Origin: Adineta vaga
Taxonomy: Eukaryota; Animalia; Rotifera
Assembly: GCA_021613535.1 (NCBI GenBank)
Contig: CP075492.1
Location: 2,108,001-2,172,000, forward strand
DNA length: 64,000 nt
Direction of reading: 5' to 3'
In this document: piece by piece, positions 22,119-52,171 of the stretch
Layout: the number at the start of each line of letters is the position of its first letter
Position numbering within the stretch: the first letter of the stretch is position 1
Notes under the pieces: generated by a model
Told to the model about the DNA's origin: nothing
What the model saw: the letters and a program-made list of their open reading frames with translations, nothing else
The model's database searches: none
Program-made: the position numbers and the translations under genes

Positions 22119-22170
22119 AGTGGTGGATGTGGGTGTCTCCTCATCACTTTAACCCACACCCACCCTCAAT
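22119..22170. repeat. Head-to-head telomere-repeat scar joining the TPR fragment to the MULE
   Basis: GTGGTGGATGTGGGTGT-CTCCTCATCACTTTAA-CCCACACCCACCCTCAAT. Confidence 0.75.
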
Positions 22171-26422: not shown

Positions 26423-26499
26423 TAGGGGTGTGTGTGGGTGTGGGTGTGGGTGTGGGTGGGCGGATCTGGGTGTATGGAAGAGAAAGTTACACACACACT
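26423..26499. repeat. Degenerate head-to-head telomere-repeat scar
   Basis: (TGTGGG)n..GGGTGTA-TGGAAGAGAAAGT-TACACACACAC. Confidence 0.75.
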
Positions 26500-28322: not shown

Positions 28323-29952
28323 GCAACACCGCTAGATCCTAGTGACAAGTAACATGCTAAAATGAAGAAAATCGTATTTTTAGACTATTCCTTAGGAAAA
28401 TATGGCTTCTGTTACAATACCATTGGATATTCAATCTCTTACAACATCAGAAAATATGGAACTAGAAATCTTTTGTCTTGTTTGGCTTGATGCTAACTCA
28501 GTTGGTAAAGATGCGCGTAATACTGAACAACAACTGCGTTCAATTATTAATTACTTCAAAAAATTTCAAGATATTCCGTCCTGTGAAAGTTTCATTCGTA
28601 CACGAACATCAAATGAACGAGTTGTTATGATTGTTAGTGGTCGATTAGGACGTGAAATTGTTCCACATATTCATCATCTTCGCCAAGTTATATCTATTTA
28701 TGTTTATTGTATGGATAAAGAAAGCAATAAAAAATGGTCTCGAGATTATCGAAAAGTAAATACTAATTAGAAAAAGAATCTAAATTAAAATAGAATTTTT
28801 CTATCGATAGACAAAAGCAGTTGTTGTTCAACTGGATGAACTTGTTTCCCGAATTCAATCTGATCATAAAATTCAAAAGAAAATTGAAGAACCTTTATCA
28901 ATTAATATATTTACTACAGGTACATCAACAACTGGTTTAAATAGTGAATTTCTTTTTTCACAAGTTCTTCTTGATTGTCTTATTCGATTAAAATTTACTG
29001 AAACTGATCAAAGAGAATTAATTGAACTTTGTAAACAACAATATAAAGATAATCGTGCTGAATTAAGTAATATTCATGAATTTGAAGAAAAATAATTATC
29101 TAAAAATGCTTTATGGTGGTATACAAGAGAATCATTTTTTTATAAAACACTTAATGCTGCACTTCGTGGATCATCTATTCATATAATATTTCTTTATCGT
29201 AAATATATAAATGATATTCAATATCAATTAAAACAAAATCAAGTTAAAAATTCAATTCAAGTTTATCGTTGTCAGATGATGTCAAATGAAGAATTAGATA
29301 CTTTAAAAAACTATTCTCATCAATTTATTTCAATTAATTCGTTTTTTTCAACCAGTTTAAATAAAGAACAAGCTCTTGAATTTCTTCAAGTTCCTGATGA
29401 TACAGAAAAGTTAGTTGGTGTTTTATTTCAAATTAATGCTGATCCTAAAATGGCTGTAACAAAACCATTTGCTAATCTTAAAAAATTTAGTGAATTTCAA
29501 GATGAAGATGAAATTTTATTTATGATTGGATCGATTTTTCGATTGGACAACATCACGATTAACGAAAATGACCGAGTTTGGATTATACAAATGACATTAT
29601 GTAACGATGAAGAACATGATTTACGAGATGTTCTCACACATACGAAAGAACAATATGTGAGTAAAGAAACGAATTTTCACACATTAGGAAAACTATTATT
29701 GGATATGTTGAAATTTGAACTGGCTCAAAAATATTTAATACGTATGTTAGAACAACTTCCACTCGATAATTCATCAAGAATTGATATATATTTGGATCTT
29801 GCCAAAGTCGAAAAACATTTACGCAACGAAGACAAAAGTTTAGAATGGCGTCAAAAAGCAGCCGAGTTAGATAAACAAATTGGACCGAGTTCTCAATCCA
29901 ATATAGATAAATCAAATAAATTCATAGGTATGCTTATTGAAATAAATGACTA

Positions 29953-30019
29953 CAGTAAAACCTCTCTATAGTGGATACTCTCGGGACCATTCAGAAGTGT
30001 CCACTGTAGAGAGGTGTCC
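29953..30019. mobile_element. Truncated Tc1/pogo-like MITE end
   Basis: TA-CAGTAAAACCTCTCTATAGTGGA..TCCACTGTAGAGAGG; cut by a telomere scar. Confidence 0.55.
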
Positions 30020-30068
30020 ATCTTGAGGGTGTGGGTACTCTGTGAAGGGACACCCACACTCACACTCG
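30019..30068. repeat. Head-to-head telomere-repeat scar
   Basis: CATCTTGAGGGTGTGGGT-ACTCTGTGAAGGG-ACACCCACACTCACACTC. Confidence 0.8.
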
Positions 30069-30404
30069 CGTGTAAATATTGTGCCACGCGGTAAACCGTT
30101 TCACGCTTTTCATTGTACTTTATATGGTTTTGTTTTTAGGCAAACCACAACGTGTTAAATCAACATCTTCAACCGAAGAACTTGATTATGAAAAACGTGA
30201 TTGGCATCGGCGTCCTGGTCGCCATGAAAAATGTTATAGAAAGCGTCACGATGCCACTTGCACTTCGTCTGATGATGATAGTTATAAGGGTGAGTATCAA
30301 GAAAAATTGGCTGAAACCGCGGTGAACAAAACCATTGCCAGCAGCGTGTTTATTCTCCGCGGATTTGATTATAGAAGGTGACAAAAGTTTAGGGCACTTT
30401 TATT

Positions 30405-30595
30405 TTGGGTGTGGGTGTGGATGAGTGTGGGTGTGGGTGTGGATGAGTGTGGGTGTGGGTGTGGGTGTGGGTGTGGGTGTGGGTGTGGGTGTGGGTGTGG
30501 GTGTGGGTGTGGGTGGGGGTGTGGGTGTGGGTGTGGGTGTGGGTAAAAAAACGTTCTACACCCACACCCACACCCTCACGCCTGCACCCTCAAGA
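30405..30595. repeat. Head-to-head telomere-repeat scar with a long (TGTGGG)n arm
   Basis: ~140 bp of TGTGGG repeats, AAAAAAACGTT spacer, then CTACACCCACACCC...CACCCTCAAGA. Confidence 0.95.
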
Positions 30596-31657
30596 AGGGA
30601 TGACAATCAGTGAAATAGGGTAGGAGCATGCTATTGTAGGTTGTAGTTAGATTTACTAATTTCCTGCTAGTAGCTTTACTCCAAAGATCTAACCGATTTG
30701 ATTTCTATGTGGGTTGATAGAGCCGATCAAGAGCTATCAGAATACTATGGTGTTGTACTTTGCACGGTAAATGATGGAGAAAATGCTCGTGGGTTATCTG
30801 TGACACGGCCCGATATTCACATGTTTCGTATATTGCGTGCTAAGTTGAGTCTGTGAAAAAATGACTAAGATAAGAAGAAACCTAGCATCAGTTGCCACCA
30901 AAATGATCAGCTCGATGAGCTCTTCAAGCTGTAGAAGTATGAGCCATTTCTGAGGGGGTCGATCTATATAGTGGGAGGTTTCCCATGGATTCACTCCATG
31001 TATGCATTCACTGTAACAAATTCTAATCTTCCATGTAATGACCGTACAGGATTCATTTTTTAACCGAAATATGAGTCCGAATTAGACCAGATAAATTTAG
31101 TCTGACCAAACTTCGATCAACTCGAATTTTTTAGTTCGAGATCAGTATTAGTGCATAGATTATAGAGAAATGATAGATTTATTGATTTTCTGTTTTGTAT
31201 TTGATTTTGGGCTTATTTTTCCTGTACTTCATTTTTGTTACCTTCCGTCACTAAATATAAAAATAACACAGGTTAACCTTTCCGGCCGTTTTTATATTCT
31301 ATTTTGTGTTTAGAAAAACCACGGGATGCTCCATTATATAACAAATCACTGTATTCTGATTACAAATGTCATTGCGGAGGACGTGCTTGTAGTGAATGTC
31401 AAAACTGCCGTGATTGGTATTGGCGTTCTGATGGCCAGGAAAAGTGCTACGTAAAGCGTCATGATGCGACCTGTACTTATGGTGGTCGTCTTGATCGTTT
31501 TTTTGGTCGTAATAGTGGTCGTGATTATTATTCTCGTAGTTTTGATGGCTATCACTATCAATATTATCATGGTGATGGTGGAAGTCTATGTCAATGCGAG
31601 ACCAACTGTGATTAGTATAATAAGCATTTTGACTTGATGTTGTGTTTGAATGAAGAA

Positions 31658-31711
31658 CTACCACAATCTAGATTTCGACTTTTATTGAAAGAATCAATCT
31701 TCAGGCGGTAG
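31658..31711 (-). ncRNA. Type I hammerhead ribozyme (Penelope/Athena pLTR type)
   Basis: Minus strand: CTACCGC-CTGAAGA-tt-stem II-GAAA-TCTAGA-TT-GTGGTAG, followed by ...TTCAAACACA. Confidence 0.8.
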
Positions 31712-31796
31712 AAAGATCTGCATGAATGAATCACAAATCTTCCAAAACGAATTCGAAAGATCTATACTTCAAAAGTAGCAGACAGTCATCATTAAA

Positions 31797-31840
31797 GGGT
31801 GGGTGTGGATAAAGGTGGGTGAGTGTGGGTGTGGGTGAGT
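31797..31840 (+). repeat. G-strand telomere tract at the 3' end of a minus-strand HHR module
   Basis: GGGTGGGTGTGG...GAGTGTGGGTGTGGGTGAGT. Confidence 0.85.
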
Positions 31841-31847
31841 AAAGCAT

Positions 31848-31892
31848 ACCGTGATCGCGATTTCGTCTTTGCTAGTAGACTCTTCAGGCGGC
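31848..31892 (-). ncRNA. Type I hammerhead ribozyme
   Basis: Minus strand: GCCGC-CTGAAGA-GTCT(actagcaa)AGAC-GAAA-TCGCGA-TC-ACGGT, then ATGCTTTACTCACCC plus telomere repeats. Confidence 0.85.
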
Positions 31893-32121
31893 TGTGTTTT
31901 TTTAGTTGGTTATATTCCAACATATCGTATTTTAGTTGTGGTGTCCTTATATAGTGAATCGGATGGCTGAGAAGCAAGTCGGTGATTGGGTTGTAACACT
32001 GTAGTATGGCGACATCTTTATGAATTAAAGAACTGAGTGTGGAATGCGAATTGAAATGGACGGTTGCACATTGTTGACGAAGACATGATGATAAAGATGG
32101 ATGGAATTTGATGGATATGGC

Positions 32122-32310
32122 GGGTGTGTTTGAAAATAGATATAGAAAGAATCAAATATTAGAAATCTTTTCATTTTGTCCACAAGATTAAAGATTCGAA
32201 TTTATTTAAAGTGTCCACATAGATATGCTTGAATAAGTACGAGAAACTTATTCGAAAAGTTCATTAAATCAGAGCAGGACTCGAACCCACATCTTCCGAT
32301 AACCGGTCTG
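32122..32310 (-). mobile_element. tRNA-headed telomere-joined element, copy B (5'-truncated in the anticodon arm)
   Basis: Reverse complement aligns along its length to 41675-41860; B-box GGTTCGAGTCC; ends CTATTTTCAAACACACCC. Confidence 0.85.
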
Positions 32311-32567
32311 AGGATATTGGCTGAATACCGTTCTGGTTTTCACGATCACATCATATCAGAATGGCTGATGCTTCGCTGAGACTCTGCTCTTCGCAATATT
32401 GGTTCCCCTGGCGTTGTTGTTCTAAAGTCATCGTTGTACTATTCATTTCTTTTGATTCGTAGTTATTAATAGAGATCAGGTTGTCGGAAATGCAGTTATC
32501 TGTTGTTTGGGCCCCTCTGAATCTTACTATCGTTTTCTCTTTTGCAATTTCGATTTTAAAGTATTCT

Positions 32568-32714
32568 ACCGGTTTCGACCTTGTCCAAGGGTCTCATCAG
32601 ATGGATTATGTCTGCATATCCTCACATCATGACTTCAAATGCTGAATGGCTATTTATAACAAAAGCATTGGAGAGAAATTATGTGATATGCAGACATGAA
32701 CTACCATGACCGGT
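32568..32714 (-). ncRNA. Type III hammerhead ribozyme with extended stem I (minus strand)
   Basis: ACCGG-TC-ATGG..long hairpin..CCAT-CTGATGA-GACC(cttggacaa)GGTC-GAAA-CCGGT. Confidence 0.85.
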
Positions 32715-32852
32715 GTGTGTCTGTCTTCTGACTCTTCGCAGGGCTCAACTACTCAAATACTAATGATTTTGTTGTCATACTGTAGTATGAAAAATAATCT
32801 TTATTATTTGAGTAGTTGAGCACTGAGAACAGTCAGAAGACAGACACACACG

Positions 32853-32997
32853 CCGGTCATGGTAGTTCATGTCTGCATGTTACATCATTTCTCTCGAAGT
32901 CTTTTCTTATGAATAGACATTCAGCATTTGAGGTCGTGATGTGAAGATATGCAGACATAATCCATCTGATGAGACCCTTGAACAAGGTCGAAACCGG
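32853..32997 (+). ncRNA. Type III hammerhead ribozyme with extended stem I (plus strand); predicted cleavage after C32858
   Basis: CCGG-TC-ATGG-tagttc-ATGTCTGCAT...ATGCAGACAT-aat-CCAT-CTGATGA-GACC(cttgaacaa)GGTC-GAAA-CCGG. Confidence 0.85.
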
Positions 32998-33589
32998 TAG
33001 AAACTATGCAAGGAACACGATTATAGAGACTTAAGTTAGTAATGTATATCTTTGCCGAAAACGAAGACCGACAGCGTTGTGCGAATTACCGTCTCACTCA
33101 GTCGTCATAGTTGTTGTTTCTTGTATCTATACAGGATCATTCTAAAACTAACAATATTCATATATAGTATGATCAATCGGTTTCATGTGAATATTACATC
33201 CTGTTGAACACAGAGAGCTACTTGAAGAGTTCCCTGAGCGAATTCGAAATCTAACTAATACGGATGATTATAAACTTCATATTCCCAATATAAAAATATC
33301 GGACATGATTCAGACTCTACCGATCTATATCGGTGTCATCAAAGGTCTTTCAGCAAAAAAAGTCAGGTAAAACAGATAAAATGCAGCAGAAGCATACAGT
33401 CTACATTGACCAAAATGCTTCTGCTGCTTTTTTTTATCGGAGTCAGAAATATGTATCCTTGCCTAAAATTCTCTGTAACGTTTACAGTAGACTATCTGTC
33501 ATCGAAACACTATGACGAGAAACATAAACATACATTTCACTTCCATACGATTACCGAAAATCAACTCAGCAATTAAAGCCAAACATAAA

Positions 33590-33814
33590 CCCACCGAATA
33601 TCGGGAGATGTAGGTTCGATTCCTGCTTTGATTTTATGATCTTTCTTTACAAGTTATTCGTACTTGTTTAGACATATCCTTGTGGTTGCATTTTCTTTAA
33701 TTTCGAAGATATTTCCGTGGACAAAAGAAATGATTATTTTGCTTTATAACTCGTTCATTTTCTTATTTTCAAACTCACCCTCACCCTCGCCCTCACACCC
33801 ACCCTCACCCTCAA
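33590..33814 (+). mobile_element. tRNA-headed telomere-joined element, copy C (diverged, 5'-truncated), followed by (CACCCT)n
   Basis: ATCGGGAGATGTAGGTTCGATTCCTGCTTTGATT head; same body hairpin; ends TTATTTTCAAACTCACCC-TCACCC...CCCTCAAT. Confidence 0.8.
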
Positions 33815-34524
33815 TCTTAATTTCTTTTTAGCTGCATATAATAATAATCTCCATTCGTTATTAAAATTTAATAAGATATCTGATGATCTTCTTAGCAGAA
33901 GTGAAATCTAGATTATGGCAGCTAGTGTCACCCTCACCCCTCACTCCCTTGGTTAATCCGACGCCACGTCCCTCAATGCTCACACGTATACCCGTATTCA
34001 ATGCAGCATCCTATTCGAGAACCAGCACAATCAACTCTATTTGTAGCACAGATTCATTGACGAATATCCGCAGAAAATACTCGTAAAAGTGCTCCAAAAA
34101 CCCAGCTTTTGGGTCCTAACCCCCCTTATAGGACCTACGACCCCCCCTCTCAAATGGTCTCATTCGATGCAGAATTTAATTCTGCATCCAGCACAACCCT
34201 TTCCAGAGCCAGCACAGATTCATAGCCGAATATCCACAGGAAATACTCGAATCCGCTGCTAACTTTACTCACGTATAGAAGACCCATAGAAGAAAGAGAG
34301 AACGAGAAAGACGAAAGATCGTCCATCTATTATAATAGATGGCGATCCTGACAACTATACTATAGCGAAATTTGAAGACGAATCGTTAATGGCATGATAT
34401 TTTTTTGAACGATTAGTTGAAAACAACAATAAAAAGTACATGTTTCGTGTCATATCATCGATACAATCCGCAAGTACAATAATGCTATGATCGTGTCAAG
34501 TGTTCTGTCTCCATATACTATCCA

Positions 34525-35273
34525 TTAGTTGCCGGCGAATATATAACTACCCAGAGGATCCCGATTAAAAAGCCAAATACTAAGTGACAGGAAGAAAACT
34601 CCCATAAAAACCGATACGCCACCACAGATCAAGAAAATACGACCAAGGCGAGAAGTAGGCTGCTTCCAGCGAGCCTCCGTTGGTTGTCGTCCATCGTACC
34701 AACATGTTTCTTCGTTGTTGATCTAGGAAGTAAACAAATTGATGATATACTGATGATTACACTTACTGAAAAATCTTTCTTCATCCTTTTGTAGTATATA
34801 CTGCTGATGAGCAATATTCACGGTTCACAAACATAATTATTTCTGATGACATGAGTATACGAAAGTTAGAAATGACTTACACATTTCACTGGCCTTTTAT
34901 ATGTCTTATTTTAATCTCTGTTCTTAATGCTAATATTTACCTTATGTGTAGCTGTTTGATTCAGCGCATCCGTTGGAGATTGATATCTTTTTTCACTTTC
35001 TACAGTAGTATTCACTCGCGGTTTTATATCGAGTTGAGCTTTCCATGCGGCACTATAGCAGTTAAATGTGGTATAACGTGTTCGACATGTACGATTTCGA
35101 TAACCAACATTGAATACAAAACAAGTGCTCTGCTTGTAATTTTTTTCTTTCGAATAAGCATCTCTATAGACAAATACACCAGCAATCAGCAGACCCAGAG
35201 CTATCCCTAGGAATGTACAACCGATATAAAGTGACATGTGCGCCCTGAACTTTTTGCTGCTTTTCTGATCCAT
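34525..35273 (-). CDS. Two-TM protein with a Cys-containing loop, BK-channel beta-subunit-like topology (exons 35273-34941, 34722-34525)
   Basis: TM1, loop with TC..C..C..CWYD, TM2; phase-0 GT-AG intron joins in frame to TAA. Confidence 0.7.
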
Positions 35274-35989
35274 ATCGAGTAAGATGTGTAAAAAGGAAAA
35301 AGAATATCAAACTTCGTTGTTTTGTGTTACAGAACTTTGTTTTATATACGTGTTTTATTCAAACAGCCACGTGTAAAATAAAACGGTGAAATAATTGCAA
35401 CACTATTGCATGAAACGATGGAAAGCAAATAAAGAAAAAGTTTCGTCAGAAGAGAATCAGCATTATTTTTCGTTATAGAACGATCGTTCTTGATGTCAAG
35501 CAAATATTTTGTCCTTATCAAACATTTTTCGGAGTAATGCACGTCAATCGTTCGTCATGAATCACATACATATATTACTTTTGATCATACAAGAATACAA
35601 AAACACATGATGCAACAACGATATTTCATTGCTTAGAAAAAAGAAGTAGCTGTTCGACAATGAACAATTTCAAATCGATTAGTAATTTTTTCATCCTGTA
35701 GTAAACGTACTGGATGATTTTTGAGTTTAAACAAGGATTGAAATGGATTTATATATGAAAAATGAATCTTTTTTTAGGCTCTGATCATTAAGATAGGTGA
35801 ATGTAAATATAAAGATGAACACATGTGAACAAGAAATGAGAATTTCATATACTCACTCACATTCGACAAGATTGCCACCGTTCGTCTCGTTCTTTTATCT
35901 GTATTCCATTGACGATATTATGAAACAAACAAAATTTTGCTTTTATCTTTTTCTGTAAGTTATTATTGTTTGTATTATGAATATCTGTG

Positions 35990-37817
35990 AAGATGTTATT
36001 TATCATAATACTCTTGCTAAGCTATCCATTGCTCAATCGTGCAACTATAGTTCATTGTGATTTTGATGTCACCTTTAGTTTAACAAATGGTGAACATTCT
36101 CAAGAGATCGATTATGATTACACACTAATGGCAAAGAGTGGTCATTATCGTTATTTTAATCGACAATTTAGTACACTCAATCGAAGGACACAAATAACAA
36201 CAATCAGTCGTTTATAACCATTGATTGATCGTGCTATATATTTTAGTGTATGGTACTATATGCCTCATGCAAATTTGCCATTCGATATTGAAGTTGGACA
36301 AGATGATGATGGAGAACTCGTACGTGCGATATTTTCTACTGCCAGTAGAAATATATCGACAAATGATTGGAGATTCATCAATGTTACATTATGAAATGAA
36401 GAATTAAAAATATATATTCGATTGTATGTTACAACTCAATCTTTAACATTCGATGATTTTTCAGTGGATTATTTTTATGCATCACATACACCACCACCAA
36501 AAACGCTAAATTCTTGTGATTTCAAATTATCATCATCATCGTGTACAAATGATTTGGTTTCTTTATCTGAATATCTCTATCAATGGTTAATTCTGAACAC
36601 TACGGATGGCGTCAAAGTTCAAACAGGTGCTCCATCTATGGATTATACATTTCGAAATGCCTCAGGTCATTATGCATTATTACCCGGTCCTAAAAATGGT
36701 TATGTTGGTTATCTTCATCTACCAAAAACAACTTCAAATTACATCGAAAGAATCATATTGCTTAAATTTTCAGTATTATGAAACGGAACGAGTGAATCGA
36801 ATGTCGTTCGTGGTTGTCAGATGATCGAACTCTCTCCCAAGATCGAATCCTAACACTCGCACTATTTTACTTGAATTGTAGATATACAACGAATGACTGG
36901 TAAGTATCTGAAATAAGTTTGAATGACGCTATTGTACGACTATGACGTCGTAGTTGATTACAAAAAAAGGAATGTTTTCACATCTTTGAACCGATCTAAT
37001 TCTTTTCTACATTAGGACTTGGGATGTCATCAATCTCCCCACGGGTAATTGTACACCATTGTTTCGTGTATTTAATGGAGATCAATATATAAGTACATTT
37101 GCCATTGATAATATTGCTATTATGTCATGTGATTATCCTTCTTTTCAACCTACATCATACAAGACTCTACTTATGTTTTCATGCGATTTCGATCAGTCCG
37201 ATATGTGTAGTATGACGAACACTGGTCCAATGTTGAAGCCTACTTTTAATTTCATGCTTTCAACCGGTGAGACCATACCAAATAAAGATCTTGGATCAGT
37301 ATAAGATCAAACACATAATTCAACATTGGGTGGTTTTCTCTATTGGAATCGACAATTACCACTTACTTTACAAGATTCTGGTAGAATAATGATATCGAAA
37401 ACTCTTGTAGGTGATTCGGGTCTGTGTCTTCATTATGCATTTTATGTAAAATCAAAGTCGATTAACAAAAATACACCGACGATCATCGTATCCTATTGAC
37501 CCTATTCGAATAATTTATGGACAAAATCCTTAGACGATAGTCAAGGATGGCAGTTGGTCTTGGTTAATTTCTACTATAGTCTTGATGAGAAAATATTCTA
37601 TCTTTATGTCAATCAATCGACATCAATTCCAGTATCGATCGTTTTTGATGATATTAAAATTGATTTGTGTAACCGTTTATCACCTACAACAATATCAACA
37701 TCTAGTAGCAGTAGCGCATCCTCAAGTACAAAAAAATTACCTAGCACTTCAACGAATTTTGTTACAACGGCTCCTAGTCACATGTGGCTGATTTATATCA
37801 TATCATGGATACAGTGA
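35990..37817 (+). pseudogene. MAM-domain secreted protein pseudogene (multiple frameshifts and stops)
   Basis: Signal peptide; repeated CDF, DYT..SGHY, CLNFQY, FAIDNI, IVFDDI motifs spread over different frames. Confidence 0.75.
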
Positions 37818-38857: not shown

Positions 38858-40671
38858 ATGGCGCTTCCTGAATTACGACAAATTGTCAACGAATTTAAAT
38901 CCCAAAAAATATCAAAACAATTAAAAAGACGTGCTCAACGAGAATATAAAATTATTCAAAGTCTACGTCGATTATTACGTGAACGACCTGATATTATGAT
39001 TTGTCGAACAGAAAAGACCAAAACATTATATATTGGTAATCGAATGACAATGACTCGTAAAGCATACGAATATATGACTAAAACATCAGCTTATGAAGAA
39101 ATTACTGATAATGGTTCACCTTTAACTTTTATATTACAAGGTCTACATACATTACTTGATTCTATTGTGCGCACACATGGTCTAACTGATAAACAACGTA
39201 AAAAATTACTTCCAAATTTAAATCGTGTAGAATTAGCACATTATCATGGTTTACCAAAGACACATAAGATAGGAAACAAAACGCATTATTTTATTTATTT
39301 TTTAATAATTCTACTTTTAAAATTTAATATAGGATGGAATACCATTATGACCTATTATTGCATCTATTCATTCACCGAAAACATTGCTGTCGAAATTTCT
39401 AAATGATCTTCTTGCACCTATCTATCTACAAGTGGCACGTGACACAACATTTATTAATGATATCGATTTAATACGAAAATTAGAAACTCATGTTAACCAA
39501 GGTTTTTTTAATTCAACCACAAAATTTGTTATAGCTGACGTGAAAAATCTTTATACGATGGTACCAAGAGATGGTGCAATACTAGTATTGGCTAAATTTT
39601 TAGAAAAATATGCAAAAAATAGAAAAATCGGTACATTGACAATTGATCATATACTACGTATGGCTCGTTTCATATTGGATACAAATTATTTTGTTTATAA
39701 TGATAAATACTACAAACAAATACGTGGTGGAGCCATGGGTTCCGCTTTCACACAAGTTCTAGCCAATATTTATATGTTTGAATGGGAACAAGACTTAATT
39801 GCATATATACACCAACATAATGGAATCTATGGCAGGTATGTAATGTATTCACCAACGAAATAGATTTATTCTATTATTTTTCTTCCTTAGATATATTGAT
39901 GATATCTTCATCGTTACGAATCAACCAATTGCCGAGGTACAAGTGGAATTACAAAAAGCTCAAATCAAAGATATTAATATTGAGATAACACCAGAAATTA
40001 GTTTGTCAGTCAATTTTCTCGATGTATCAATTACTAATGAAAATGGTCAATTAAGAACATCGATCTATCATAAACCAACTGCCGAACCATACATATTACC
40101 TTATACATCAGATCATCCACGTCATATTCATCGTAATATACCATATACAGCTTTATTACGTGCAGCTCGTCTTTGTTCACATGTCGAAGACTTTAATACA
40201 GAACGTATTCGTATTGACATGTCTCTCTTATTAAATAATTATCCACCAAGATTTATCACTTACCAATTTAAAAACTTTTTTCACAACTACAATGCACTTC
40301 CTGTCTTAGAACAATTAGATACAGATATCTATCAACGATTACATCATGAAGTACTACATAAACCTTCACGACGTGAAAAACAATTGAATACCTCGATAAA
40401 AGATCCAGTTCAATATCCTGCTGTCTTACAAAAAAAACCATGGAATAAATCAATTATGTATGTAAAATATAAATATGATAGTGCTCTAACAACACACTTT
40501 CCAAAACAATTCAATCAATGGTGGAATAAACATTTTAAATATGGCCCCAATGATCTGAATAATGCACGCATTCTTCTGATAGGAAACACCAATCGAACAC
40601 TTGAACAATACTTAATCCATAAAAAACCATCAAAAGAAATACTAACCAAAATACAATCAACAGAAAACTAA
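38858..40671 (+). pseudogene. Athena reverse transcriptase with introns at ~39269-39332 and 39836-39890; TGA at 39348-39350; first donor mutated
   Basis: YHGLPKTHK, ADVKNLYT, GGAMGS, R|YIDD split by an intron, NFLDV, YHKPT, SDHP; no GIY-YIG domain. Confidence 0.9.
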
Positions 40672-41201
40672 TATCATTTGTGCATTTAAATTTCAACAAA
40701 AAACACTTTTCCTCTCTCATTCAATACTAATGTACAATTCCTCCTATTTTCCTTCACTAACAAAAAGACTATTTCTTTTTTTCTTCAAATAAAACCCATT
40801 CATTATTCCTCTGTTACTCACCTATCATTCTCGCTTCCATCTCTTCATAAACACATCTATGTAATCCTTTTTAGATTATACACATTTACATATGCAAACC
40901 TCCAAACCAAGACTAATTATCTATTACATATTGATGACAAGTAATGTATCATTCATATATCATAAACTTCTTTCTTCTATCTTCAGACTCAGCAGACTAG
41001 CCGAACAAGTGACCAAATCGCGATCGTACGATTGCTTTGAATTATTTTGTTATCTGTAAACTCACCATTTACGTAAGAAATCATTATATTCTATACATTT
41101 CATGTAATTACTATTATATATATATGTTAGATGTTTCCTTCTTTAAGTTAACTTCTATAATTTACATGACTAATTATTATATAGTTTCATATAGTTCTTA
41201 A

Positions 41202-41245
41202 CATACCCGTTGAGTTCCTTAAGCAAGAACGAAACATGTCGTATG
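41202..41245 (+). ncRNA. Type I hammerhead ribozyme with a degenerate core (probably inactive)
   Basis: CATAC-CCGTTGA-GTTC(cttaagcaa)GAAC-GAAA-CATG-TC-GTATG; a more decayed copy lies at ~40985-41070. Confidence 0.7.
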
Positions 41246-41645
41246 ACTGCTTTGAACTATATTCTTATTTGTAAACTCACCCTCACCCTCACCCTCACCC
41301 TCAAACTCACCTTAGTTGTTACGACCTTGTTACGAATAAAGATCTTAGTTTCGTAATAGAGTTATGGAAAATGTAGTAACTCTAATGTCCTGATATGTAC
41401 ATTGATATCTTTTGATTATCTTTTGATTATCTTTTGATTTTCTTAAGATATCATTTATGTATCGTGGATTAAGAGTTCTGTTTTGCTACATTCGAAGTTT
41501 CTTTTGTTGCTTAACTAGGTTCTTATAGTCCTCGTGCAACAATAAGAATCCTTATTAGTTAATCATTTGATCATTAATGTCCTGAACTATCGATTTTTGA
41601 TTTATTCAGAGTTTTGATATGTTGTTATTAACTAACAGAAGAAAA

Positions 41646-41716
41646 AGTCAGATAGTTTAATTGGTAAAATAGCCGACCAGTTATCGGAAGATGTGGGTTC
41701 GAGTCCTGCTCTGATT
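41646..41716 (+). tRNA. tRNA-like cloverleaf (Thr-like AGT, non-canonical loop) forming the head of a repeated element; probably not a decoding tRNA
   Basis: Acceptor AGTCAGA/TCTGATT; D-arm GTTT-AATTGGTA-AAAT (A-box); CCGA-CCAGTTA-TCGG; T-arm GTGGG-TTCGAGT-CCTGC (B-box). Confidence 0.7.
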
Positions 41717-41895
41717 TAATGATCTTTTTGAATAAGTTTCTCGTACTTATTCAAGCATATCTCTGTGGATACTTTGAATAAATTCGACTCTTTAGTCTTG
41801 CGGACAAATGAGAAGATTTCTAATGAATGATTCTTTCATCATCTATTTTCAAACTCACCCCTCACCCTCACCCTCACCCTCACCCCTCACCCTCA
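41646..41895 (+). mobile_element. tRNA-headed telomere-joined element, copy A (complete head), followed by (CACCCT)n
   Basis: tRNA head, ~145-nt body with the hairpin TTGAATAAGT-ttctcgt-ACTTATTCAA, then CTATTTTCAAACTCACCC and telomere repeats to 41895. Confidence 0.85.
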
Positions 41896-43400: not shown

Positions 43401-43436
43401 GGTGGGTGGATGTGGGTGTGTTTAAAGAAATCAAAC

Positions 43437-43489
43437 TACCACAATCTAGATTTCGATTCCTATTTAACAGAATCGTTCATCAGGTGGTA
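43437..43489 (-). ncRNA. Type I hammerhead ribozyme
   Basis: TACCAC-CTGATGA-ac-GATTC..GAATC-GAAA-TCTAGA-TT-GTGGTA; the surrounding ~108-bp module differs by one base from 52142-52250. Confidence 0.85.
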
Positions 43490-43722
43490 AAGAAATTCTG
43501 CAATATCAGTAAACTAAAGAAAATCTTTTGAAATTTCGTAGATTTTTAGAAAGTTTTCAAGAAATGACTGCATAGAATGTTACATGGGCGAAAAAAGTAA
43601 ATTCTATTAAAAGGCAAAGACATATAAACAGGGCGTATGAATTGATATGCAATTGTTTAAACGGTCATTTAATTAAAGAGAGGGCTTAATATTGGTCTTT
43701 GTGATGGCGGCTTTTATTTCTA

Positions 43723-44320
43723 TTATGGGATGGAATTGTGATAGCCGTAGTAGAAAAGAATTTGTTGAATTGTTTGGAAGGGAAGTATGAGATGTTTTGG
43801 TTTTTCTGTTGCTTTCTTCGATGGATATTGTTTATAACCATGTAATTTTGATAGGAATCGGCCGAATTCTAGACAGTTAAAGTCTCCTCTAATATAGTCA
43901 TTCCATGGCAAAATATTTTGGGTAACTTTGTAATTACAACATGTACCAGTAATTGTGTCGAGAAATCGAGTTCTTTTATTGATTTTGTTCTTAAAAATAA
44001 TTTGTATATATAATTCTTTTAGAGGGTATAATGGATTTATTTCTTGGCCGACACAAAGATATTGTATTTCTTCATCATAAAGTTCTTGTCGAATATAATT
44101 CATAATAGTGTGTTTTGAAGTAGTAGTCCATGATATAATAGCTGATGATTCTGAATTATGTTGAATTGGCTCTCGAAGAGAAGATGGTGGTGGCTCTTGT
44201 AGATTAAATTGACATAGGTTAGCAATAGTTGGTCGATCAAGATCAGCATATTTACTGTACCAAGATTGACAATTAGGCTTTTTATCTGTTTGATCGACTG
44301 TAAGTTGAAAAGATGTTTAC
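43723..44320 (-). pseudogene. Degenerate Rep-like (HUH rolling-circle initiator) ORF
   Basis: Frame open upstream of Met44103: IISWT (motif I-like)...YLCVGQE..ELYIQIIF (motif II position, His lost)...WNDYI (motif III Tyr). Rep-like ORFs are known terminon cargo. Confidence 0.45.
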
Positions 44321-44857
44321 ATTGTAAATTCTGATGATTTTTTGATGAATAGGGTCAAGTAGTTAGATCTTAGATGATAAGATGTAGGTTAATTGTGTTT
44401 TCGAAGCTTAATTTTTGATGGAAGTTGTTGTAATATACATATATATCTAGAGAGGGAACGATGGCAAAAGATCAATTCATGTCTACAAGATTTAAGGAAT
44501 GTTATATTGATTAATACATTTCTAGTCTAATGAAAATAGTCTATAGGACGTATGTTTTCGTAAAATAAAGATGGTATGCATGATCTATAGAAGTGGGTAT
44601 TATTATGAGGTAAATTGTTGGTTTTCGGAATATAAAGAATCGTAAGTACCATTATTTACGCCATAAGTACTCTGTAAGTGTTTGGAATCATCCATGCTGT
44701 GTTGTTTGTTTGTTAGATCTTGAGTAATTTTATCGATTCGAACATTAATTGAATCTATATGTGAACGATTGCATTTTTTTCGAGTGTTTACCGTACCACT
44801 ATACTCTATAATAAATTATACATCAAAGTGAAAGGGTGAAGAAAATGACTGAGAAAT

Positions 44858-45265
44858 CTAGTCACCTGTATCTAATGTTAAGTTTCGTCGCGTTTTTTTA
44901 TGAACCAAAGAACGATAGAAATATGAAAGTATAATTGCAAAGAATATTACTAGCAGAATACAGGCAATAATAGTTTGGTGATGTTGAGTTTTTAGAGTGT
45001 GTAGGAATCGGTCAATGCTCGTTGATGATTCTGATATATCCGTTATTGAAGATATTTCTGAATTAGTTGGTGTGCCCATTATCCATGATGTCGTTGTAGA
45101 AATTTGTGTATCTGATTTTGGTTCAACCACTTGAACATTGTAGTGTTCTAAGTTCTGTAGAAAATCGGCGGTTGAAGAAAAGTTAGTCTTTAACATGTTC
45201 GCTCGTGGTCTATATTCAAATTGAAGTTGACCATTCATCATAACAAGATTCTTCAATGAACTCAT
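44858..45265 (-). CDS. Small single-TM protein, probable terminon ORF
   Basis: 135-aa ORF with a Ser/Thr-rich stalk, TM IIACILLVIFFAIILSYFY and a basic tail. Confidence 0.55.
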   Translation of the reverse strand: MSSLKNLVMMNGQLQFEYRPRANMLKTNFSSTADFLQNLEHYNVQVVEPKSDTQISTTTSWIMGTPTNSEISSITDISESSTSIDRFLHTLKTQHHQTIIACILLVIFFAIILSYFYRSLVHKKTRRNLTLDTGD

Positions 45266-45768
45266 ATTTGTAATTGTTTAATATCAATGAAGTGAAAAGG
45301 AAAAGGAAAAATCTAAAATAGAAAGAAATATCCTTAAATCGGAAGAAAAAAAATCTGAACAAAGACTAAGCGATAGAAAAGAAGAGTGTCTACTATATGT
45401 AAAAGTTCTATTTTCAACAAAAAAAACAAAGATATTTGTGATAGGATTGTATTTTACGATTATTTATTATGTCTACATTTCATACTACAATGTTAGTAAG
45501 ATAAATAATAACGTTTTGTTATTCTAAGAATATAATGTATATAGTTTGATGTATGTTGTTATTATAGATTCAATCTATATTATTTCATAAACATCGCTGA
45601 TTCTCGTCTTTTTGTGACGTTTTGTCAGATGGTTCTGGTATTGTAATCTAATTATGAATAAAAAGATTCATTTCTCTTAGAAGGCTAGATTCAATATGTT
45701 TGAACTTATGAATACGTACCTTCACGTCTGTTTCGACTTTTTTCTCTGATTCTTTTGTTTTTACAGGA

Positions 45769-46006
45769 GCTTCGCTGAGACTCTGCTCTTCGCAATATTG
45801 GTTCCCCTGGCGTTGTTGTTCTAAAGTCATCGTTGTACTATTCATTTCTTTTGATTCGTAGTTATTAATAGAGATCAGGTTGTCGGAAATGCAGTTATCT
45901 GTTGTTTGGGCCCCTCTGAATCTTACTATCGTTTTCTCTTTTGCAATTTCGATTTTAAAGTATTCTACCGGTTTCGACCTTGTCCAAGGGTCTCATCAGA
46001 TGGATT
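45769..46006. repeat. 238-bp direct duplicate of 32370-32607
   Basis: Apparently identical sequence containing the start of ORF MNSTTMTLEQQ and the HHR core. Confidence 0.9.
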
Positions 46007-47405
46007 GTGTCTGTCTCCTGACTTTTCGCAGTGCTCAACTACTTAAATAGTAACGATCGTTTTTGATACTGATAAGATATTCAAAAATAACGTTCTCATG
46101 TTTAACACAAAATAAGAGAAGAATATTCAAAGGATCAATAGACAAGTACATGGAAAAGCAAAATAGTAACTTCTCATCGAAACCGGTCGGCTACGTATAG
46201 CCATGGAAAGTCTCGTCTTCACCTTTGATATAAGATAATGAAAAATAGTCATCGACTTTATTCTTAGCTTCCTTTTTATTAAATGAAATAAAACTGATCG
46301 ATAACAGAAAAAGTTACTTTTTCGACGAATTATCATTTGTCTGTGGTGTTAAATCGACATAATACTATTTGTTTGTCGATGTCGATGTCGATGTAGTAAC
46401 ACCGAGCCTTTTCGATTCTTCTTTTGCTTCATCTTCATCTCGTTGTCTACGTTCTGCTGGATTACCAACATCGATCTAATTAATACAGAAATAGTTCAAT
46501 ACTTCATATTTCTCATAAAAATTCTTTTCTACACATCTTACCCATTGTCATGGAAGTTCTTCTTCCATGTACACATTGAGATACCAATTAATGTAATCCT
46601 CCAATATCCGAGGATTATTTAATCTCGGATTTGAAGGTGTTAATCCATAGTATCGCCGATACATTGGTGAATAAAAGAATTGACTATTAGCCGACACCAA
46701 TGGAGTTCCCTACAGGATAGAAGTAGTATGAAACAAGTTCGATTCCAAAATTCATGTTTATTCAAAGTTGTCCTTACCACTGTTCCTTCTCGTTTTTCAC
46801 CATCAGGTCTGCTGCTTGATGGCCTGTGACCTGAAACAAGGCTTGGTTCAGGTGATGTTGATATCTTTTGTGGTACTTCTTCATGGCATTTTAAACCAGA
46901 AGAAGACCGAGTGACGGCTTCATCAGATAGTCTTCTGATTATAGGCCGTCTTCTTGCTGCTCTTGATGGCATAAGACCATCGAGAAGCCGTTTGGCCAAT
47001 GGTTTGTGGTCGACTGACTTCTCGCGGCTAGGCATATCTGACGAGTAAATATTTATACTTAAATCTAAAGTATAAAGCAAAAATATAATATATCTCTATG
47101 CTCTACATCGATACAAGAGTACGTCATGCAACTTTATTTCAGTCTGACAACTAACAAATGATCATGCAAAAACGAACACATACAATAATAAAAAGAAAAG
47201 AAAACACTACTTCAGATCGACTGTTCAACGTCTGTTGCTTCCATTCTGGTCAATAATGATGCCGAAGGTTTCTTTCGAACAAACAGATCATTCAAAGATG
47301 GATTCGTCAATGCTGTTATCATGACACGTACATCTTTGACAGCTGATCCTTTGTAACCATAATATTTCGTCCATAATTTCCGAAATTGTCGATTGAAATC
47401 CTTCG

Positions 47406-47428
47406 ATGAGGGTGTGGGTGTGGGTGTG
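47406..47428 (+). repeat. G-strand telomere tract
   Basis: GATGAGGGTGTGGGTGTGGGTGTGT. Confidence 0.8.
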
Positions 47429-47697
47429 TCACGTCGTTAGATTCCGTAGAATGAACGAATATATTTAAGTAAATATATGAAGAGTTCTTTATTAGGAATG
47501 AACCGAAATAGATGAAGATAGAGAATGAGAAAGAGAGAACCAAAGGTATAGATGTGTAGATACATACATGTATAGATAAACGTAACTATATATATATGTA
47601 TGTATGTATAGGAAAAATCCAAGAACGAAAGGAAAACACATATATCATATATAGAAAAGTCCTTCTGTATGTAAAGGAATATACCATATACATCACA

Positions 47698-47772
47698 GGG
47701 TGGGTAGTGGTGTGGGTGCGGGTGTGGGTCACACTATACTTTTAACCCACAAACACACCACACCCACACTCT
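47698..47772. repeat. Head-to-head telomere-repeat scar; polarity switch point of the 43.4-56.7 kb block
   Basis: GGGTGGGTAGTGGTGTGGGTGCGGGTGTGGGT-CACACTATACTTTTAA-CCCACAAACACACCACACCCACAC. Confidence 0.8.
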
Positions 47773-48708
47773 GAGTACCTAGACGAAATAGAACGTAGGT
47801 ATAGAAACGAAAGAAAATGATGATCGAGATAGTTATATGTTCAAAACAACACATTTTCAACGACAATATATATTGGTATGAAAGAAATGAAGATTTACTC
47901 TTTTCTTTGACAATTGAATGGAGCAAAGCCAGCAATTATTACTCAAAAATGTCTGACCAATATTGTCCATCGAGTAGAAACAATATTAAATGATTTATAT
48001 TACTTGAAATGCATCAGTCATGTTCAACATACAATGACCGATGTCAATCATGCACAAGTTTAACTGAATTATTTATATTTTATACCTAAACTGATCTAGT
48101 AGGCCTCTTCTTCTAAACTATTTTTTTATTCTTCTCTATTCTTTTGATAATTAGAAACTAGTTATGGCAGCCTACTCACAACTCTGCCAAATGAATTTAC
48201 TCTTACATTTGATTTGAATAAATCAGTGTAACAATGTAAATTCGTCTTTGTTTTGGATTTTTAATTCAAAATATATAAGTCATTCGTCAATCGCCTTAGC
48301 CAGCGTGAAACTAGTTATGGCAGCCTACTCACATCTTCAAGATAGCTGGTGGAAACACTCTGAAGTTTATCAGAAAGTAACTGTGAGCAACACTATAGCA
48401 TCTCGGTATACCAAATACTCGCCAGAACGGGCTCCGTCTTAATTTTTCTCAGCTGTATTACTATCTTAGCATCGGGACGTAGACTCTTTAAGAATGAAAG
48501 AGGCCAACTTTTCTTTCAAGTTCCAGGTTTATTGCTGTTGAAGTCAATAAAGGAAAAAAGACACTACACATAAACATATCTTGGTTAAAATAAAACGCGA
48601 CAATGAACAGCGAGGGAAAAAAATCGTTTTAATTGGTTTTTTGATTTGTGGATGACGGATTATGATACAGAGCAAGTGGAGCAAGCACTTAGAACTAGTA
48701 ATTTTATT

Positions 48709-50507: not shown

Positions 50508-50535
50508 TCCACACCCACACCCACACCCTCAAGAT
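50508..50535 (-). repeat. C-strand telomere tract cutting into the Tc1 transposase
   Basis: CCACACCCACACCCACACCCTCAAGAT. Confidence 0.85.
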
Positions 50536-52140: not shown

Positions 52141-52171
52141 GCTTTAGTTTACTGATATTGCAGAATTTCTT

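What the first reader, a model, noticed from the sequence alone, without database searches (positions are those of the whole stretch)
31640..33814. Mirror-symmetric retro-chain: the same scar architecture filled with RNA-derived modules
Seen: the left half is all minus-strand, with 3' ends facing left (HHR module 31640-31750, G-tract plus HHR module from 31797, G-tract plus tRNA element from 32122, terminon piece from 32370). Polarity flips at the 32782 hairpin. The right half is plus-strand and ends in the tRNA element plus C-tract at 33814. Inference: the two break ends were each extended by alternating rounds of telomere addition and telomere-primed reverse transcription, then joined. This would be an expanded version of the short G-spacer-C scars, located inside a chromosome rather than at a terminus.
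Basis: partly seen in the sequence, partly recalled or inferred. Interest (0 to 1): 0.8.

Follow-up and report, generated by a model that had tools for sequence, protein, structure and literature searches.

The report
Convergent telomere-tailed retroelement chains, rotifer
Inside an Adineta vaga chromosome, two short chains of truncated telomere-tailed retroelement pieces face each other around a 220-bp inverted repeat; this looks like two once-exposed DNA ends that were patched and then joined, but that history is inferred, not shown.

Summary
The window is Adineta vaga chromosome CP075492.1, and the block lies about 2.14 Mb from the record start. On the left are minus-strand modules with G-rich telomeric tracts on their left: a hammerhead (HHR) module, a second HHR module and a tRNA-Thr-derived element. 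An inverted repeat (arms 32564-32781 and 32784-33002, 89.5% complementary) marks the flip. On the right are plus-strand modules with C-rich tracts on their right.

Four corrections apply. The structure runs to 33949, where a further HHR module and C-tract sit. The 596 nt at 33003-33598 match nothing. The "terminon piece" ends on its left inside an ORF (codon 26) with no tract. Only five of eight junctions carry telomeric repeats.

Each half is the published Athena/Terminon pattern: 5'-truncated copies ending in an HHR plus reverse-complement telomeric repeats. The head-to-head arrangement is the unusual part. Short G-spacer-C scars do recur: 13 G-then-C cases against 1 C-then-G in 97 kb of Adineta DNA.

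Extension of two ends followed by joining is the best reading (about 0.5). I could not test whether both ends came from one break. The central palindrome also resembles the inverted terminal repeat typical of Penelope-like elements.

The parts
31630..31640 (+). Vestigial G-rich tract (GATGTTGTG), the eroded tail of module M1, directly after the stop codon of the left-flank ORF (31304-31615).
   Evidence: Aligned with the GGTGGGTGGATGTGGGTGTG tail of the 43.4-kb copy.
31641..31796 (-). M1: decayed HHR-A module. The CUGAAGA...GAAA core, the AUCUAGAU stem III palindrome and a 7-bp stem I are kept; stem II is eroded. The 5' part (31723-31796) is unassigned.
   Evidence: 78% identical to 43417-43502 and 52159-52244; alignment; fold.
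31797..31840 (+). G-rich telomeric tract, interrupted by ATAAAG.
31841..32118 (-). M2: module with a canonical HHR core (31861-31887) 20 nt from its tail. Its 3' end is weakly related to the 3' end of the RT-like element at 40930-41065.
   Evidence: strict motif; score 38 against shuffles 22 +/- 3.7.
32119..32130 (+). Very short G-rich tract (GGCGGGTGTG), the tail of M3.
32131..32308 (-). M3: tRNA-Thr-derived element, 5'-truncated near the anticodon stem. It holds the 3' 44 nt of the tRNA plus the trailer.
   Evidence: 90% identical to 41675-41860. Not itself called a tRNA.
32309..32369 (.). 61-nt filler of unknown origin, with no telomeric tract.
   Evidence: No match in the window.
32370..32781 (-). 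M4: HHR-bearing unit. In minus-strand order it holds the unit 5' end at the axis, the HHR (32573-32600), a 5' leader, an ATG at 32446 and 26 codons. It then breaks off at 32370.
   Evidence: 99.6% identical to 45769-46013 and 84% to 46006-46071; translations.
32776..32789 (.). Junction palindrome CATACT-GT-AGTATG, the symmetry axis. Homology of the 46-kb copy also stops here (46071).
32784..33002 (+). M5: right arm, the same unit on the plus strand from its 5' end to 3 nt past the predicted HHR cleavage site (HHR 32966-32993, cleavage after 32999).
33003..33598 (.). M6: unassigned 596 nt with no repeat, ORF or HHR. It contains an 18-bp hairpin followed by a T-run (33378-33441).
33599..33813 (+). 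M7: diverged tRNA-Thr-derived element (about 33599-33773) plus its C-rich tail (33774-33813).
   Evidence: 74% identical to 41682-41895 and 72% to M3.
33814..33949 (+). M8: HHR-like module (CUGAUGA...GAAAUCUAGAU, about 33880-33925) plus a C-rich tail (33926-33949).
   Evidence: (I24).

Best explanation
The block is the joint between two DNA ends that were each lengthened outward and later joined head to head.

Step 1, established for these elements in the literature: an exposed 3' end receives (TGTGGG)n repeats from telomerase. The 3' tail of an Athena/Terminon-type RNA is a hammerhead fold followed by (ACACCC/TCACCC)n. It pairs with that G-rich strand, and the element's reverse transcriptase copies the RNA, usually incompletely.

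Step 2, read from the sequence: this happened at least three times on the left end (M1, M2, M3). The same thing happened at least twice on the right end (M8, M7). That leaves G-tract plus minus-strand module on the left and plus-strand module plus C-tract on the right.

Step 3, inferred: the last additions (M4 on the left, M5 and perhaps M6 on the right) were primed without telomeric repeats. Both copies of the HHR-bearing unit run to the same RNA 5' end. Joining the two cDNA ends therefore gave a palindrome with a 2-nt filler.

Step 4, inferred: the layers were probably laid down at different times. Repeated breakage at an existing interstitial telomeric scar is one way this could happen. A single episode is less likely.

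It is not established whether the two ends belonged to one break in this chromosome or to different broken ends.
For: - Module polarity against tract polarity is as predicted at all five tailed modules.
- Tracts and HHR motifs are far above chance: 73 against 0.32 and 5 against 0.003.
[quoted passage not shown] The 3' HHR plus (ACACCC)n or (TCACCC)n is described in PMC6431247 and PMC8557442.
- Three independent copies of the central unit end at the same 5' nucleotide: the left arm, the right arm and the 46-kb copy at 46071. Two full-length cDNAs joined end to end would therefore look like a palindrome without any coincidence.
- The right arm stops 3 nt past the predicted HHR cleavage site. That fits a copy of a ribozyme-processed RNA. 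It is not what snap-back copying of the left arm would give, because the left arm continues 194 nt further.
- Short head-to-head scars are common and polarised: 7 in the window, 5 in another A. vaga chromosome (L026) and 1 in A. steineri (L027), with one C-then-G case.
- Three scars or blocks lie within 1.6 kb (30024-30067, 30404-30592, 31630-33949). They are separated by fragments of 336 and 1037 nt, too small to have existed as free chromosomes. This favours repeated in-place breakage.
- A roughly 555-nt tandem array continues on both sides of the scar at 1770-1829.
- Identity to other copies rises from the outside to the centre in both halves: 78%, 90%, 99.6% on the left; 74%, then 86-96% on the right. 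Outward growth predicts this order.
- Neotelomeres and Athena fragments have been reported at induced breakpoints in A. vaga, together with broken ends that persist over generations (PMC13564844).
Against: - No comparison with an allele, ohnologue or other species was possible, so contiguity of the flanks is untested.
- Three of eight junctions (32308/32370, 33002/33003, about 33598) have no telomeric repeats.
- 596 nt (M6) are unexplained.
- M4 begins inside an ORF rather than at an element 3' end.
- Mirror partners are much less alike than each is to a copy elsewhere in the window (72% against 90%; 89.5% against 99.6%). The two sides were therefore not filled from one RNA pool at one time, or gene conversion has overwritten the left half.
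- The same order of module types on both sides (HHR-A, tRNA element, central unit) would also follow from an old inverted duplication.
- Head-to-head inverted terminal repeats with a junction palindrome arise within single insertions of Penelope-like elements (PMC3846280).
- HHR self-cleavage is unproven, and stem I is not evident in the central copies.
Confidence: 0.5

Rival explanations
1. The flip is a built-in structure of one Penelope-like insertion. M5 plus M4 would be an 'inverted pLTR plus pLTR' pair (pLTR = the pseudo-long terminal repeat of these elements), made in a single retrotransposition event by self-priming or two-strand priming. This pair would then sit by chance or by later rearrangement between two ordinary Athena-type chains.
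For: - PMC3846280 describes A. vaga Penelope copies with an inverted pLTR of 181-218 bp abutting a direct pLTR. The direct pLTR includes the first 12-22 codons of the ORF, there are palindromes of 18-38 bp at the junction, and the HHR lies inside the pLTR (PMC8557442).
- Here the inverted arm is 219 nt. The direct unit carries an HHR and the first 26 codons. The junction is a 14-nt palindrome.
- Neither arm has a telomeric tail.
Against: - The only other copy (45769-46071) has no inverted partner.
- That element shows no second direct copy of the unit at its 3' end, which is HHR-A plus tail at 43401-43519.
- No target-site duplication flanks 32370-33002.
- No RT/GIY-YIG ORF is attached.
- This reading does not explain why the surrounding chains converge on the pair.
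Confidence: 0.22
2. The block is an old inverted duplication (palindrome) of a single minus-strand chain. It would have formed by fold-back priming at the small palindrome or by sister-end fusion, and then been degraded by indels and by gene conversion with nearby copies.
For: - Module types occur in the same order on both sides: HHR-A, tRNA element, central unit | central unit, tRNA element, HHR-A.
- Arm identity is highest at the centre (89.5%), as in palindromes kept alike by arm-to-arm conversion.
- A natural 6+6 palindrome lies at the axis.
Against: - Arm pairs differ widely in identity: 89.5% at the centre against 72% (M3/M7) and 74% over only 39 nt (M1/M8).
- M3 is far closer to the 41.7-kb copy than to M7.
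- M2 plus its tract (322 nt) and M6 (596 nt) have no counterparts.
- The flanks are not inverted copies of each other.
- The right arm stops at the HHR site while the left continues.
Confidence: 0.1
3. The arrangement is a product of DNA-level shuffling of a repeat-rich subtelomere-like region: inversion, deletion between arrays, template-switching repair or gene conversion from copies 9-14 kb away. No end extension would have happened at this site.
For: - Source-like copies of M1, M3 and M4 all lie 9-14 kb to the right in the same window (43.4, 41.7 and 45.8 kb).
- The 99.6% identity over exactly 245 nt has sharp edges, one at a 101-nt microhomology (TGTCTG) deletion boundary. That looks like a conversion or templated patch.
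- A. vaga subtelomeric regions are reported as rearrangement-prone (PMC8494291).
Against: - M1 and M7 are only 74-78% identical to those copies, so most pieces are not recent patches.
- The polarity rule is obeyed throughout the block.
- The strong G-then-C excess among short scars is not expected from random shuffling.
Confidence: 0.13
4. The block is an assembly artefact, for example a chimeric or fold-back long read built into the consensus.
For: Palindromes and telomeric repeats are classic trouble spots. The window is 100% identical to the single public assembly, so there is no independent confirmation.
Against: The arms are only 89.5% identical and carry indels. The flanks are unique. 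The same kinds of scar occur on another chromosome and in another species' assembly.
Confidence: 0.03

Closest known systems
Athena / Terminon arrays at bdelloid telomeres (EN-deficient Penelope-like elements; Gladyshev & Arkhipova 2007 and Arkhipova et al. 2017, as summarised in PMC6431247, PMC8557442 and PMC3846280)
   Same: - The 3' end is a hammerhead motif followed by a short (ACACCC)n or (TCACCC)n stretch.
- Copies are 5'-truncated and capped by telomeric repeats.
- Chains run head to tail.
- Host genes are interspersed.
- The species is A. vaga.
   Different: - Two chains of opposite polarity meet head to head, about 2.14 Mb from the end of the chromosome record.
- The modules are tiny (80-410 nt).
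- One module type derives from a tRNA gene and has no HHR.
- The central units carry no telomeric tails.
Inverted pLTR plus pLTR structure of canonical Penelope-like elements (PMC3846280; PMC8557442, Fig. 2)
   Same: - A head-to-head inverted repeat of about 200 bp with a palindrome at the junction.
- The HHR lies inside the repeat.
- The direct copy runs into the first codons of an ORF.
   Different: - There is no RT/endonuclease ORF, no second direct repeat and no target-site duplication.
- The pair is embedded between telomere-tailed chains.
Interstitial telomeric sequences inserted at double-strand breaks by telomerase, including those flanked by retro-transcribed telomerase RNA (PMC2246262, PMC8537989); head-to-head telomere fusions (PMC2847243)
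   Same: Telomeric repeats at internal sites are read as footprints of break repair or end fusion. Head-to-head polarity is the signature of two ends joined.
   Different: The mammalian break-site insertions are single-orientation tracts. Here both ends carry tracts, and retroelement cDNAs are interleaved with them.
Neotelomeres at induced breakpoints in A. vaga (PMC13564844)
   Same: Telomeric repeats and Athena fragments were detected at deletion breakpoints. Broken ends persist for generations, and the authors speak of 'scars'.
   Different: That work does not describe a fixed, layered, two-sided architecture such as this one, as far as the text I could read shows.
SINE-LINE partnerships (a tRNA-derived head with a 3' end shared with the autonomous partner)
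   Same: The tRNA-Thr-derived unit shares its last 45 nt or so plus tail with the 3' end of the RT-like element at 38.8-41.3 kb. It occurs as 5'-truncated copies.
   Different: - A T5 run 9 nt after the tRNA should stop RNA polymerase III.
- The tail is a telomere complement, not poly(A).
- The partner would be a Penelope-like element, not a LINE.

Membership tests
Athena/Terminon-type 3'-end module | Hammerhead ribozyme motif at the 3' end | tested here: met
   M2 has a strict core. M1 and M8 keep CUGANGA...GAAA and the stem III palindrome but have eroded stems. M3 and M7 (tRNA elements) have no HHR.
Athena/Terminon-type 3'-end module | [quoted passage not shown] | tested here: met
   Met for M2 (31797-31840) and M8 (33926-33949), and as a vestige for M1. 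Met without an HHR for M3 and M7. NOT met for the central units M4 and M5.
Athena/Terminon-type 3'-end module | 5' truncation followed by added telomeric repeats; head-to-tail chains | tested here: met
   M1, tract, M2, tract, M3 on the left; M7, tract, M8, tract on the right. The two chains face each other head to head, which the family description does not include.
Athena/Terminon-type 3'-end module | Reverse transcriptase of the Athena clade in the parent element | tested here: inconclusive
   The RT-like ORFs at 38858-40671 get no Pfam or PDB support. Their PLE-like motifs (GLPKTHK, GGAMGS...LANIYM) are recognised from memory only. No phylogeny was made.
Hammerhead ribozyme (Rfam Hammerhead_1, Hammerhead_3, HH9, HH10, Hammerhead_II) | Match to a curated covariance model | tested here: not met
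   No hammerhead family is listed in 30000-36000 at E up to 10, nor at gathering score in the window.
Hammerhead ribozyme (type I, minimal PLE form) | Conserved core CUGANGA...GAAA with stem II and a short palindromic stem III | tested here: met
   5 hits against 0.003 expected. The stem III palindromes are ACCGGT, ATCGCGAT and ACGCGT.
Hammerhead ribozyme (type I, minimal PLE form) | Stem I and self-cleavage | tested here: inconclusive
   Stem I is clear in HHR-A and in the 56.6-kb copy. It is absent in M4, M5 and the 46-kb copy. Cleavage cannot be tested here.
tRNA-derived SINE | tRNA-related head with an internal promoter, transcribed through the body | tested here: inconclusive
   The full copy starts with an intact tRNA-Thr (47 bits). 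A T5 run 9 nt downstream (41727-41731) should terminate RNA polymerase III.
tRNA-derived SINE | 3' end shared with an autonomous partner; several copies in different contexts | tested here: met
   The 3' end scores 82 against module 41170-41315, where shuffles give 25 +/- 4; part of this comes from the tail. BLAST gives 85% over 53 nt. There are three copies plus one tail-only copy in the window.
Canonical PLE inverted pLTR structure | Inverted and direct terminal repeat with a junction palindrome; the direct repeat includes the ORF start | tested here: met
   Arms of 218 and 219 nt, the palindrome CATACT-GT-AGTATG, and 26 codons.
Canonical PLE inverted pLTR structure | Second direct pLTR downstream of an RT/GIY-YIG ORF; target-site duplication | tested here: not met
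   No second copy, no RT/EN ORF and no duplication at 32370 or 33002.
Break-site scar (two ends of one break) | Flanks contiguous in an allele, ohnologue or outgroup that lacks the block | not testable with these tools
   The right-flank protein has no relatives. The best hit of the left-flank exon is 60% identical, in a very large family. Exact-ORF look-ups failed.

The most novel reading that the evidence does not exclude
Bdelloid chromosomes would keep a layered, readable record of repeated breakage. At a break, both ends are capped by telomerase and lengthened by Athena-type reverse transcription before being rejoined. The resulting interstitial scar breaks again later, so new layers are added symmetrically from the inside. 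Outer layers would be oldest and inner layers youngest, with the same element family on both sides of each layer. In addition, a tRNA-Thr-derived unit with a telomere-complement tail would be a previously unreported SINE-like passenger of the telomere-priming machinery.
Probability: 0.25. Interest if true: 0.8.

Novelty: new variant of a known kind. Interest (0 to 1): 0.55.

Why it matters
Bdelloid rotifers survive massive chromosome breakage, and how broken ends are protected and rejoined is an open question. Recent work proposes transient neotelomeres that leave 'scars' (PMC13564844). If convergent, layered chains like this one are the fixed footprints of such events, three things follow. 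Any assembly could be mined for the number, age and position of past breaks. It would also show which RNAs were used as patches, and whether old scars are fragile. It would also extend the known role of Athena/Terminon elements from chromosome ends to internal repair. If instead the centre is an ordinary Penelope-type inverted repeat, the locus is a decayed piece of subtelomere-like DNA of a kind already described.

Tried and rejected
- Rfam found no hammerhead hit. The palindromes only drew spurious sub-threshold microRNA matches.
- Allele or synteny test: exact look-ups of flanking ORFs failed. The right-flank protein P0001 only led back to the window's own record.
- The largest exon of the left-flank gene belongs to a huge ADP-ribosyltransferase/TPR family, with a best hit of 60%. 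That gene is a spliced model. I searched it by its largest exon only and did not join exons.
- A search with the ORF next to the 46-kb unit, meant to fetch other copies and see whether the inverted partner recurs, found nothing.
- Viral-contig scans for the central HHR and for the tRNA element found nothing.
- The one metagenome scan looked for C-spacer-G as a control. It was badly designed.
- The apparent similarity of the axis region to module M2 (repeat finder D5) is not above shuffles, so I dropped it.
- A foldback or MITE-type transposon reading of the inverted repeat was rejected. The left arm runs without a break into the 46-kb homology, and there is no clean target duplication.
- Pfam and PDB searches gave no support for the RT-like ORFs.
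- The large representative protein search was not used, because of the cost note and low expected yield.
Full report
ORIGIN AND SETTING

The right-flank ORF matches an Adineta vaga protein (I4U23_011281). The DNA fetched around that gene is 100% identical to window 24525-45273 in reverse. The window is therefore part of GCA_021613535.1, chromosome record CP075492.1 (20.35 Mb). The block corresponds to about 2,143,849-2,146,168, roughly 2.14 Mb from the record start.

The window has the make-up described for bdelloid subtelomere-like DNA. It holds host genes (a GPCR), a bacterial-type rhamnosidase, piggyBac and DDE_3 transposases, RT-like ORFs and many telomeric tracts. The (TGTGGG)n-type 12-mer occurs 73 times against 0.32 expected.

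WHAT IS IN THE BLOCK

From left to right:
- A 9-nt vestige of a G-tract (31630-31640).
- M1 (31641-31796, minus): a decayed copy (78%) of an HHR module. That module occurs with clean telomeric tails at 43401-43519 (minus) and 52142-52277 (plus).
- A 44-nt G-tract (31797-31840).
- M2 (31841-32118, minus): carries a canonical hammerhead core 20 nt from its tail.
- A 10-12-nt G-tract.
- M3 (32131-32308, minus): 90% identical to the 3' 44 nt of a genuine tRNA-Thr(AGT) gene at 41645-41718 plus its 140-nt trailer. In the parent copy this trailer ends in (TCACCC)n.
- 61 nt of filler.
- M4 (32370-32781, minus).
- A 14-nt palindrome at the axis.
- M5 (32784-33002, plus).
- M6 (33003-33598): 596 nt that match nothing.
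- M7 (33599-33813, plus): a 74% copy of the tRNA element with a 40-nt C-tail.
- M8 (33814-33949, plus): an HHR-like module with a 24-nt C-tail.

The strict hammerhead motif is found 5 times in the window against 0.003 in shuffles. Rfam's hammerhead models nevertheless do not match. The stem III sequences are 6-8-nt palindromes with no loop. From my own knowledge, this is the 'minimal' Penelope-type hammerhead thought to act as a dimer.

THE CENTRAL PIECES

M4 is 99.6% identical to 45769-46013. It contains, on the minus strand, an HHR, a leader, an ATG and 26 codons of an ORF. That ORF continues in the 46-kb copy but is cut off at 32370.

Both arms carry a 101-nt segment that the 46-kb copy has lost between two TGTCTG repeats.

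Homology of the 46-kb copy stops at 46071, exactly at the position of the palindrome axis. Three copies thus share one 5' terminus. The right arm ends 3 nt past the predicted cleavage site of its HHR, whereas the left arm runs on.

Taken together, M5 looks like a complete copy of a roughly 219-nt RNA bounded by its 5' end and the ribozyme site. M4 looks like a copy of a longer, unprocessed RNA of the same kind.

HOW EACH HALF RELATES TO WHAT IS KNOWN

Endonuclease-deficient Penelope-like elements (Athena, and the giant Terminons that contain them) end in a hammerhead fold followed by (ACACCC)n or (TCACCC)n. This tail pairs with G-rich overhangs. [quoted passage not shown] They are mostly 5'-truncated, receive telomeric repeats on the truncated end, and form head-to-tail arrays with host genes between them (PMC3846280, PMC6431247, PMC8557442).

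Each half of the block is such an array in miniature. An uninterrupted plus-strand example lies at 38.8-41.9 kb. It consists of RT-like ORFs, a 3' end with a 5-nt tail, a 5'-truncated repeat of that 3' end with (TCACCC)5, and then the tRNA element with its tail.

The tRNA element shares its last 45 nt or so and its tail with that 3' end. The score is 82 against 25 +/- 4 for shuffles, though part of it comes from the tail. This is the relation a SINE has to its LINE. I found no description of such an element in the papers I could search. The two primary Athena/Terminon papers were not available to me.

THE HEAD-TO-HEAD ARRANGEMENT

A chain grows away from its proximal DNA. G-chain-then-C-chain therefore means that two growing ends were brought together.

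The small version, G-tract then a 10-35-nt spacer then C-tract, is frequent:
- Seven in the window: 1770-1829, 22127-22168, 26424-26499, 30024-30067, 30404-30592, 47711-47768 and 60751-60961.
- Five in 21 kb of another A. vaga chromosome (L026).
- One in A. steineri (L027).
- A single C-then-G case, where two scars abut.

Two observations favour repeated in-place breakage over fusion of unrelated chromosome ends for the small scars. First, three scars or blocks lie within 1.6 kb, separated by fragments of only 336 and 1037 nt. Second, a roughly 555-nt tandem array continues on both sides of the first scar.

A second, larger convergent region lies at 43.4-56.7 kb. Its outer HHR-A modules are 97% identical mirror images, and an inner G...C pair sits at 47407 and 50531.

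BEST READING AND ITS WEAK POINTS

Several details do not fit a single episode at a single break:
- Only five of eight junctions have tracts.
- M6 is unexplained.
- Mirror partners are poor matches to each other. M3/M7 are 72% identical and M4/M5 89.5%, while M3 is 90% and M4 99.6% identical to copies 9-13 kb away.
- At each layer the right half is more diverged than the left.

The same order of module types on both sides, together with identity rising toward the centre, suggests layers added at different times. Re-breakage of an existing scar could do this. Gene conversion may have blurred the left half.

RIVALS
- The flip is the inverted pLTR plus pLTR structure typical of Penelope-like elements. 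That structure shows the same arm size, an HHR inside the repeat, the ORF start inside the direct copy and a junction palindrome (PMC3846280). Against it: the 46-kb copy has no inverted partner, and there is no second direct repeat and no target duplication.
- An old inverted duplication. Against it: unequal arm identities, unmatched M2 and M6, and non-palindromic flanks.
- DNA-level shuffling or templated patches from nearby copies.
- Misassembly, which is unlikely because the arms differ by 10% and carry indels.

WHAT COULD NOT BE DONE

No allele, ohnologue or orthologous locus could be reached. The left-flank gene is a spliced model. It was searched by its largest exon only, and the exons were not joined. 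A genome-wide census was not possible with these tools.

VERDICT

The mechanism is plausible and consistent with published biology, but it is unproven for this locus. The pieces are known kinds. The convergent layered arrangement and the tRNA-derived passenger are, as far as I could check, new variants.

Noticed in passing
window 41645-41895; copies 32122-32308 (minus) and 33599-33813 (plus); tail-only relative at 41259-41311: A complete tRNA-Thr(AGT) gene is followed by a 137-nt trailer and (TCACCC)n. The unit recurs as 5'-truncated copies that begin near the anticodon stem. Its last 45 nt or so match the 3' end of the RT-like element at 38.8-41.07 kb. It is a candidate SINE-like passenger of telomere-primed retrotransposition, yet a T5 run 9 nt after the tRNA should stop RNA polymerase III.
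   Followed up: partly
window 1770, 1829, 30024, 50531; L026 6270; L027 998 (outer edges of tracts): The outermost repeat is usually the TGAGGG variant. In at least six independent junctions the host DNA ends in (C)ATCT directly before it (CATCT|TGAGGGTGTGGG). This looks like a primer or alignment preference of telomerase for de novo addition. The inner ends of the G strands often read GGGTGTA(G).
   Followed up: partly
window 1794-1808, 26477-26487; L026 6219-6233 and 20156-20169: The spacers of several short scars are alike and purine-rich (AAGAGGAGAAACC, AAGAGAAAGT, AGAAGAGAGACATCC, AAGAAGGTTTAAA). They may be ultra-short 5'-truncated element 3' ends, or read-through past a template boundary. 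This is unresolved.
   Followed up: no
window 43401-52277, with an inner pair at 47407-47428 and 50508-50531 and a further tailed HHR at 56606-56682: A second, larger convergent (G...C) region. Its outer HHR-A modules are 97% identical mirror images over 121 nt, and it encloses a nested G...C pair. The point where polarity flips was not located.
   Followed up: partly
window 46013 compared with 32614-32716 and 32848-32952: The 46-kb copy lacks a 101-nt segment that both arms carry. The deletion lies between two TGTCTG repeats (microhomology). Identity to the left arm is 99.6% on one side of it and 84% on the other, which suggests a conversion or recombination boundary.
   Followed up: partly
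window 28402-31615 (gene model in L001 13659-16872): The public annotation joins a 564-residue gene across two telomeric scars (30024-30067 and 30404-30592). The small ORFs after each scar (30079-30381 and 31304-31615) share a motif (RDW..EKCY.KRHDATCT). Each ends about 25 nt before a G-tract. The model is probably a merge of fragments.
   Followed up: no
window 80-2198: A tandem array of units of about 555 nt (66-70% identity) continues on both sides of the scar at 1770-1829, with a phase shift of about 175 nt.
   Followed up: partly
window 38858-40671: Three consecutive plus-strand ORFs carry reverse-transcriptase-like motifs (GLPKTHK; ADVKNLYTMVP; GGAMGS..LANIYM) and are broken by frameshifts. 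There is no endonuclease domain and no Pfam or PDB hit. They are followed by a degenerate HHR-type 3' end and a 5-nt tail, and are probably a decayed Athena-type element.
   Followed up: partly
window 33378-33441: An 18-bp hairpin followed by T8 lies inside the unassigned 596-nt segment M6. It resembles a bacterial intrinsic terminator. The origin of M6 is unknown.
   Followed up: no
L008 1189-1365, L011 936-1112, L019 163-339 (metagenome contigs): Long near-perfect palindromes with (CCCACA)n, a spacer and (TGTGGG)n in the C-then-G order, in contigs of unknown organism (GC 0.39-0.47). They are unrelated to the window apart from the repeat.
   Followed up: no
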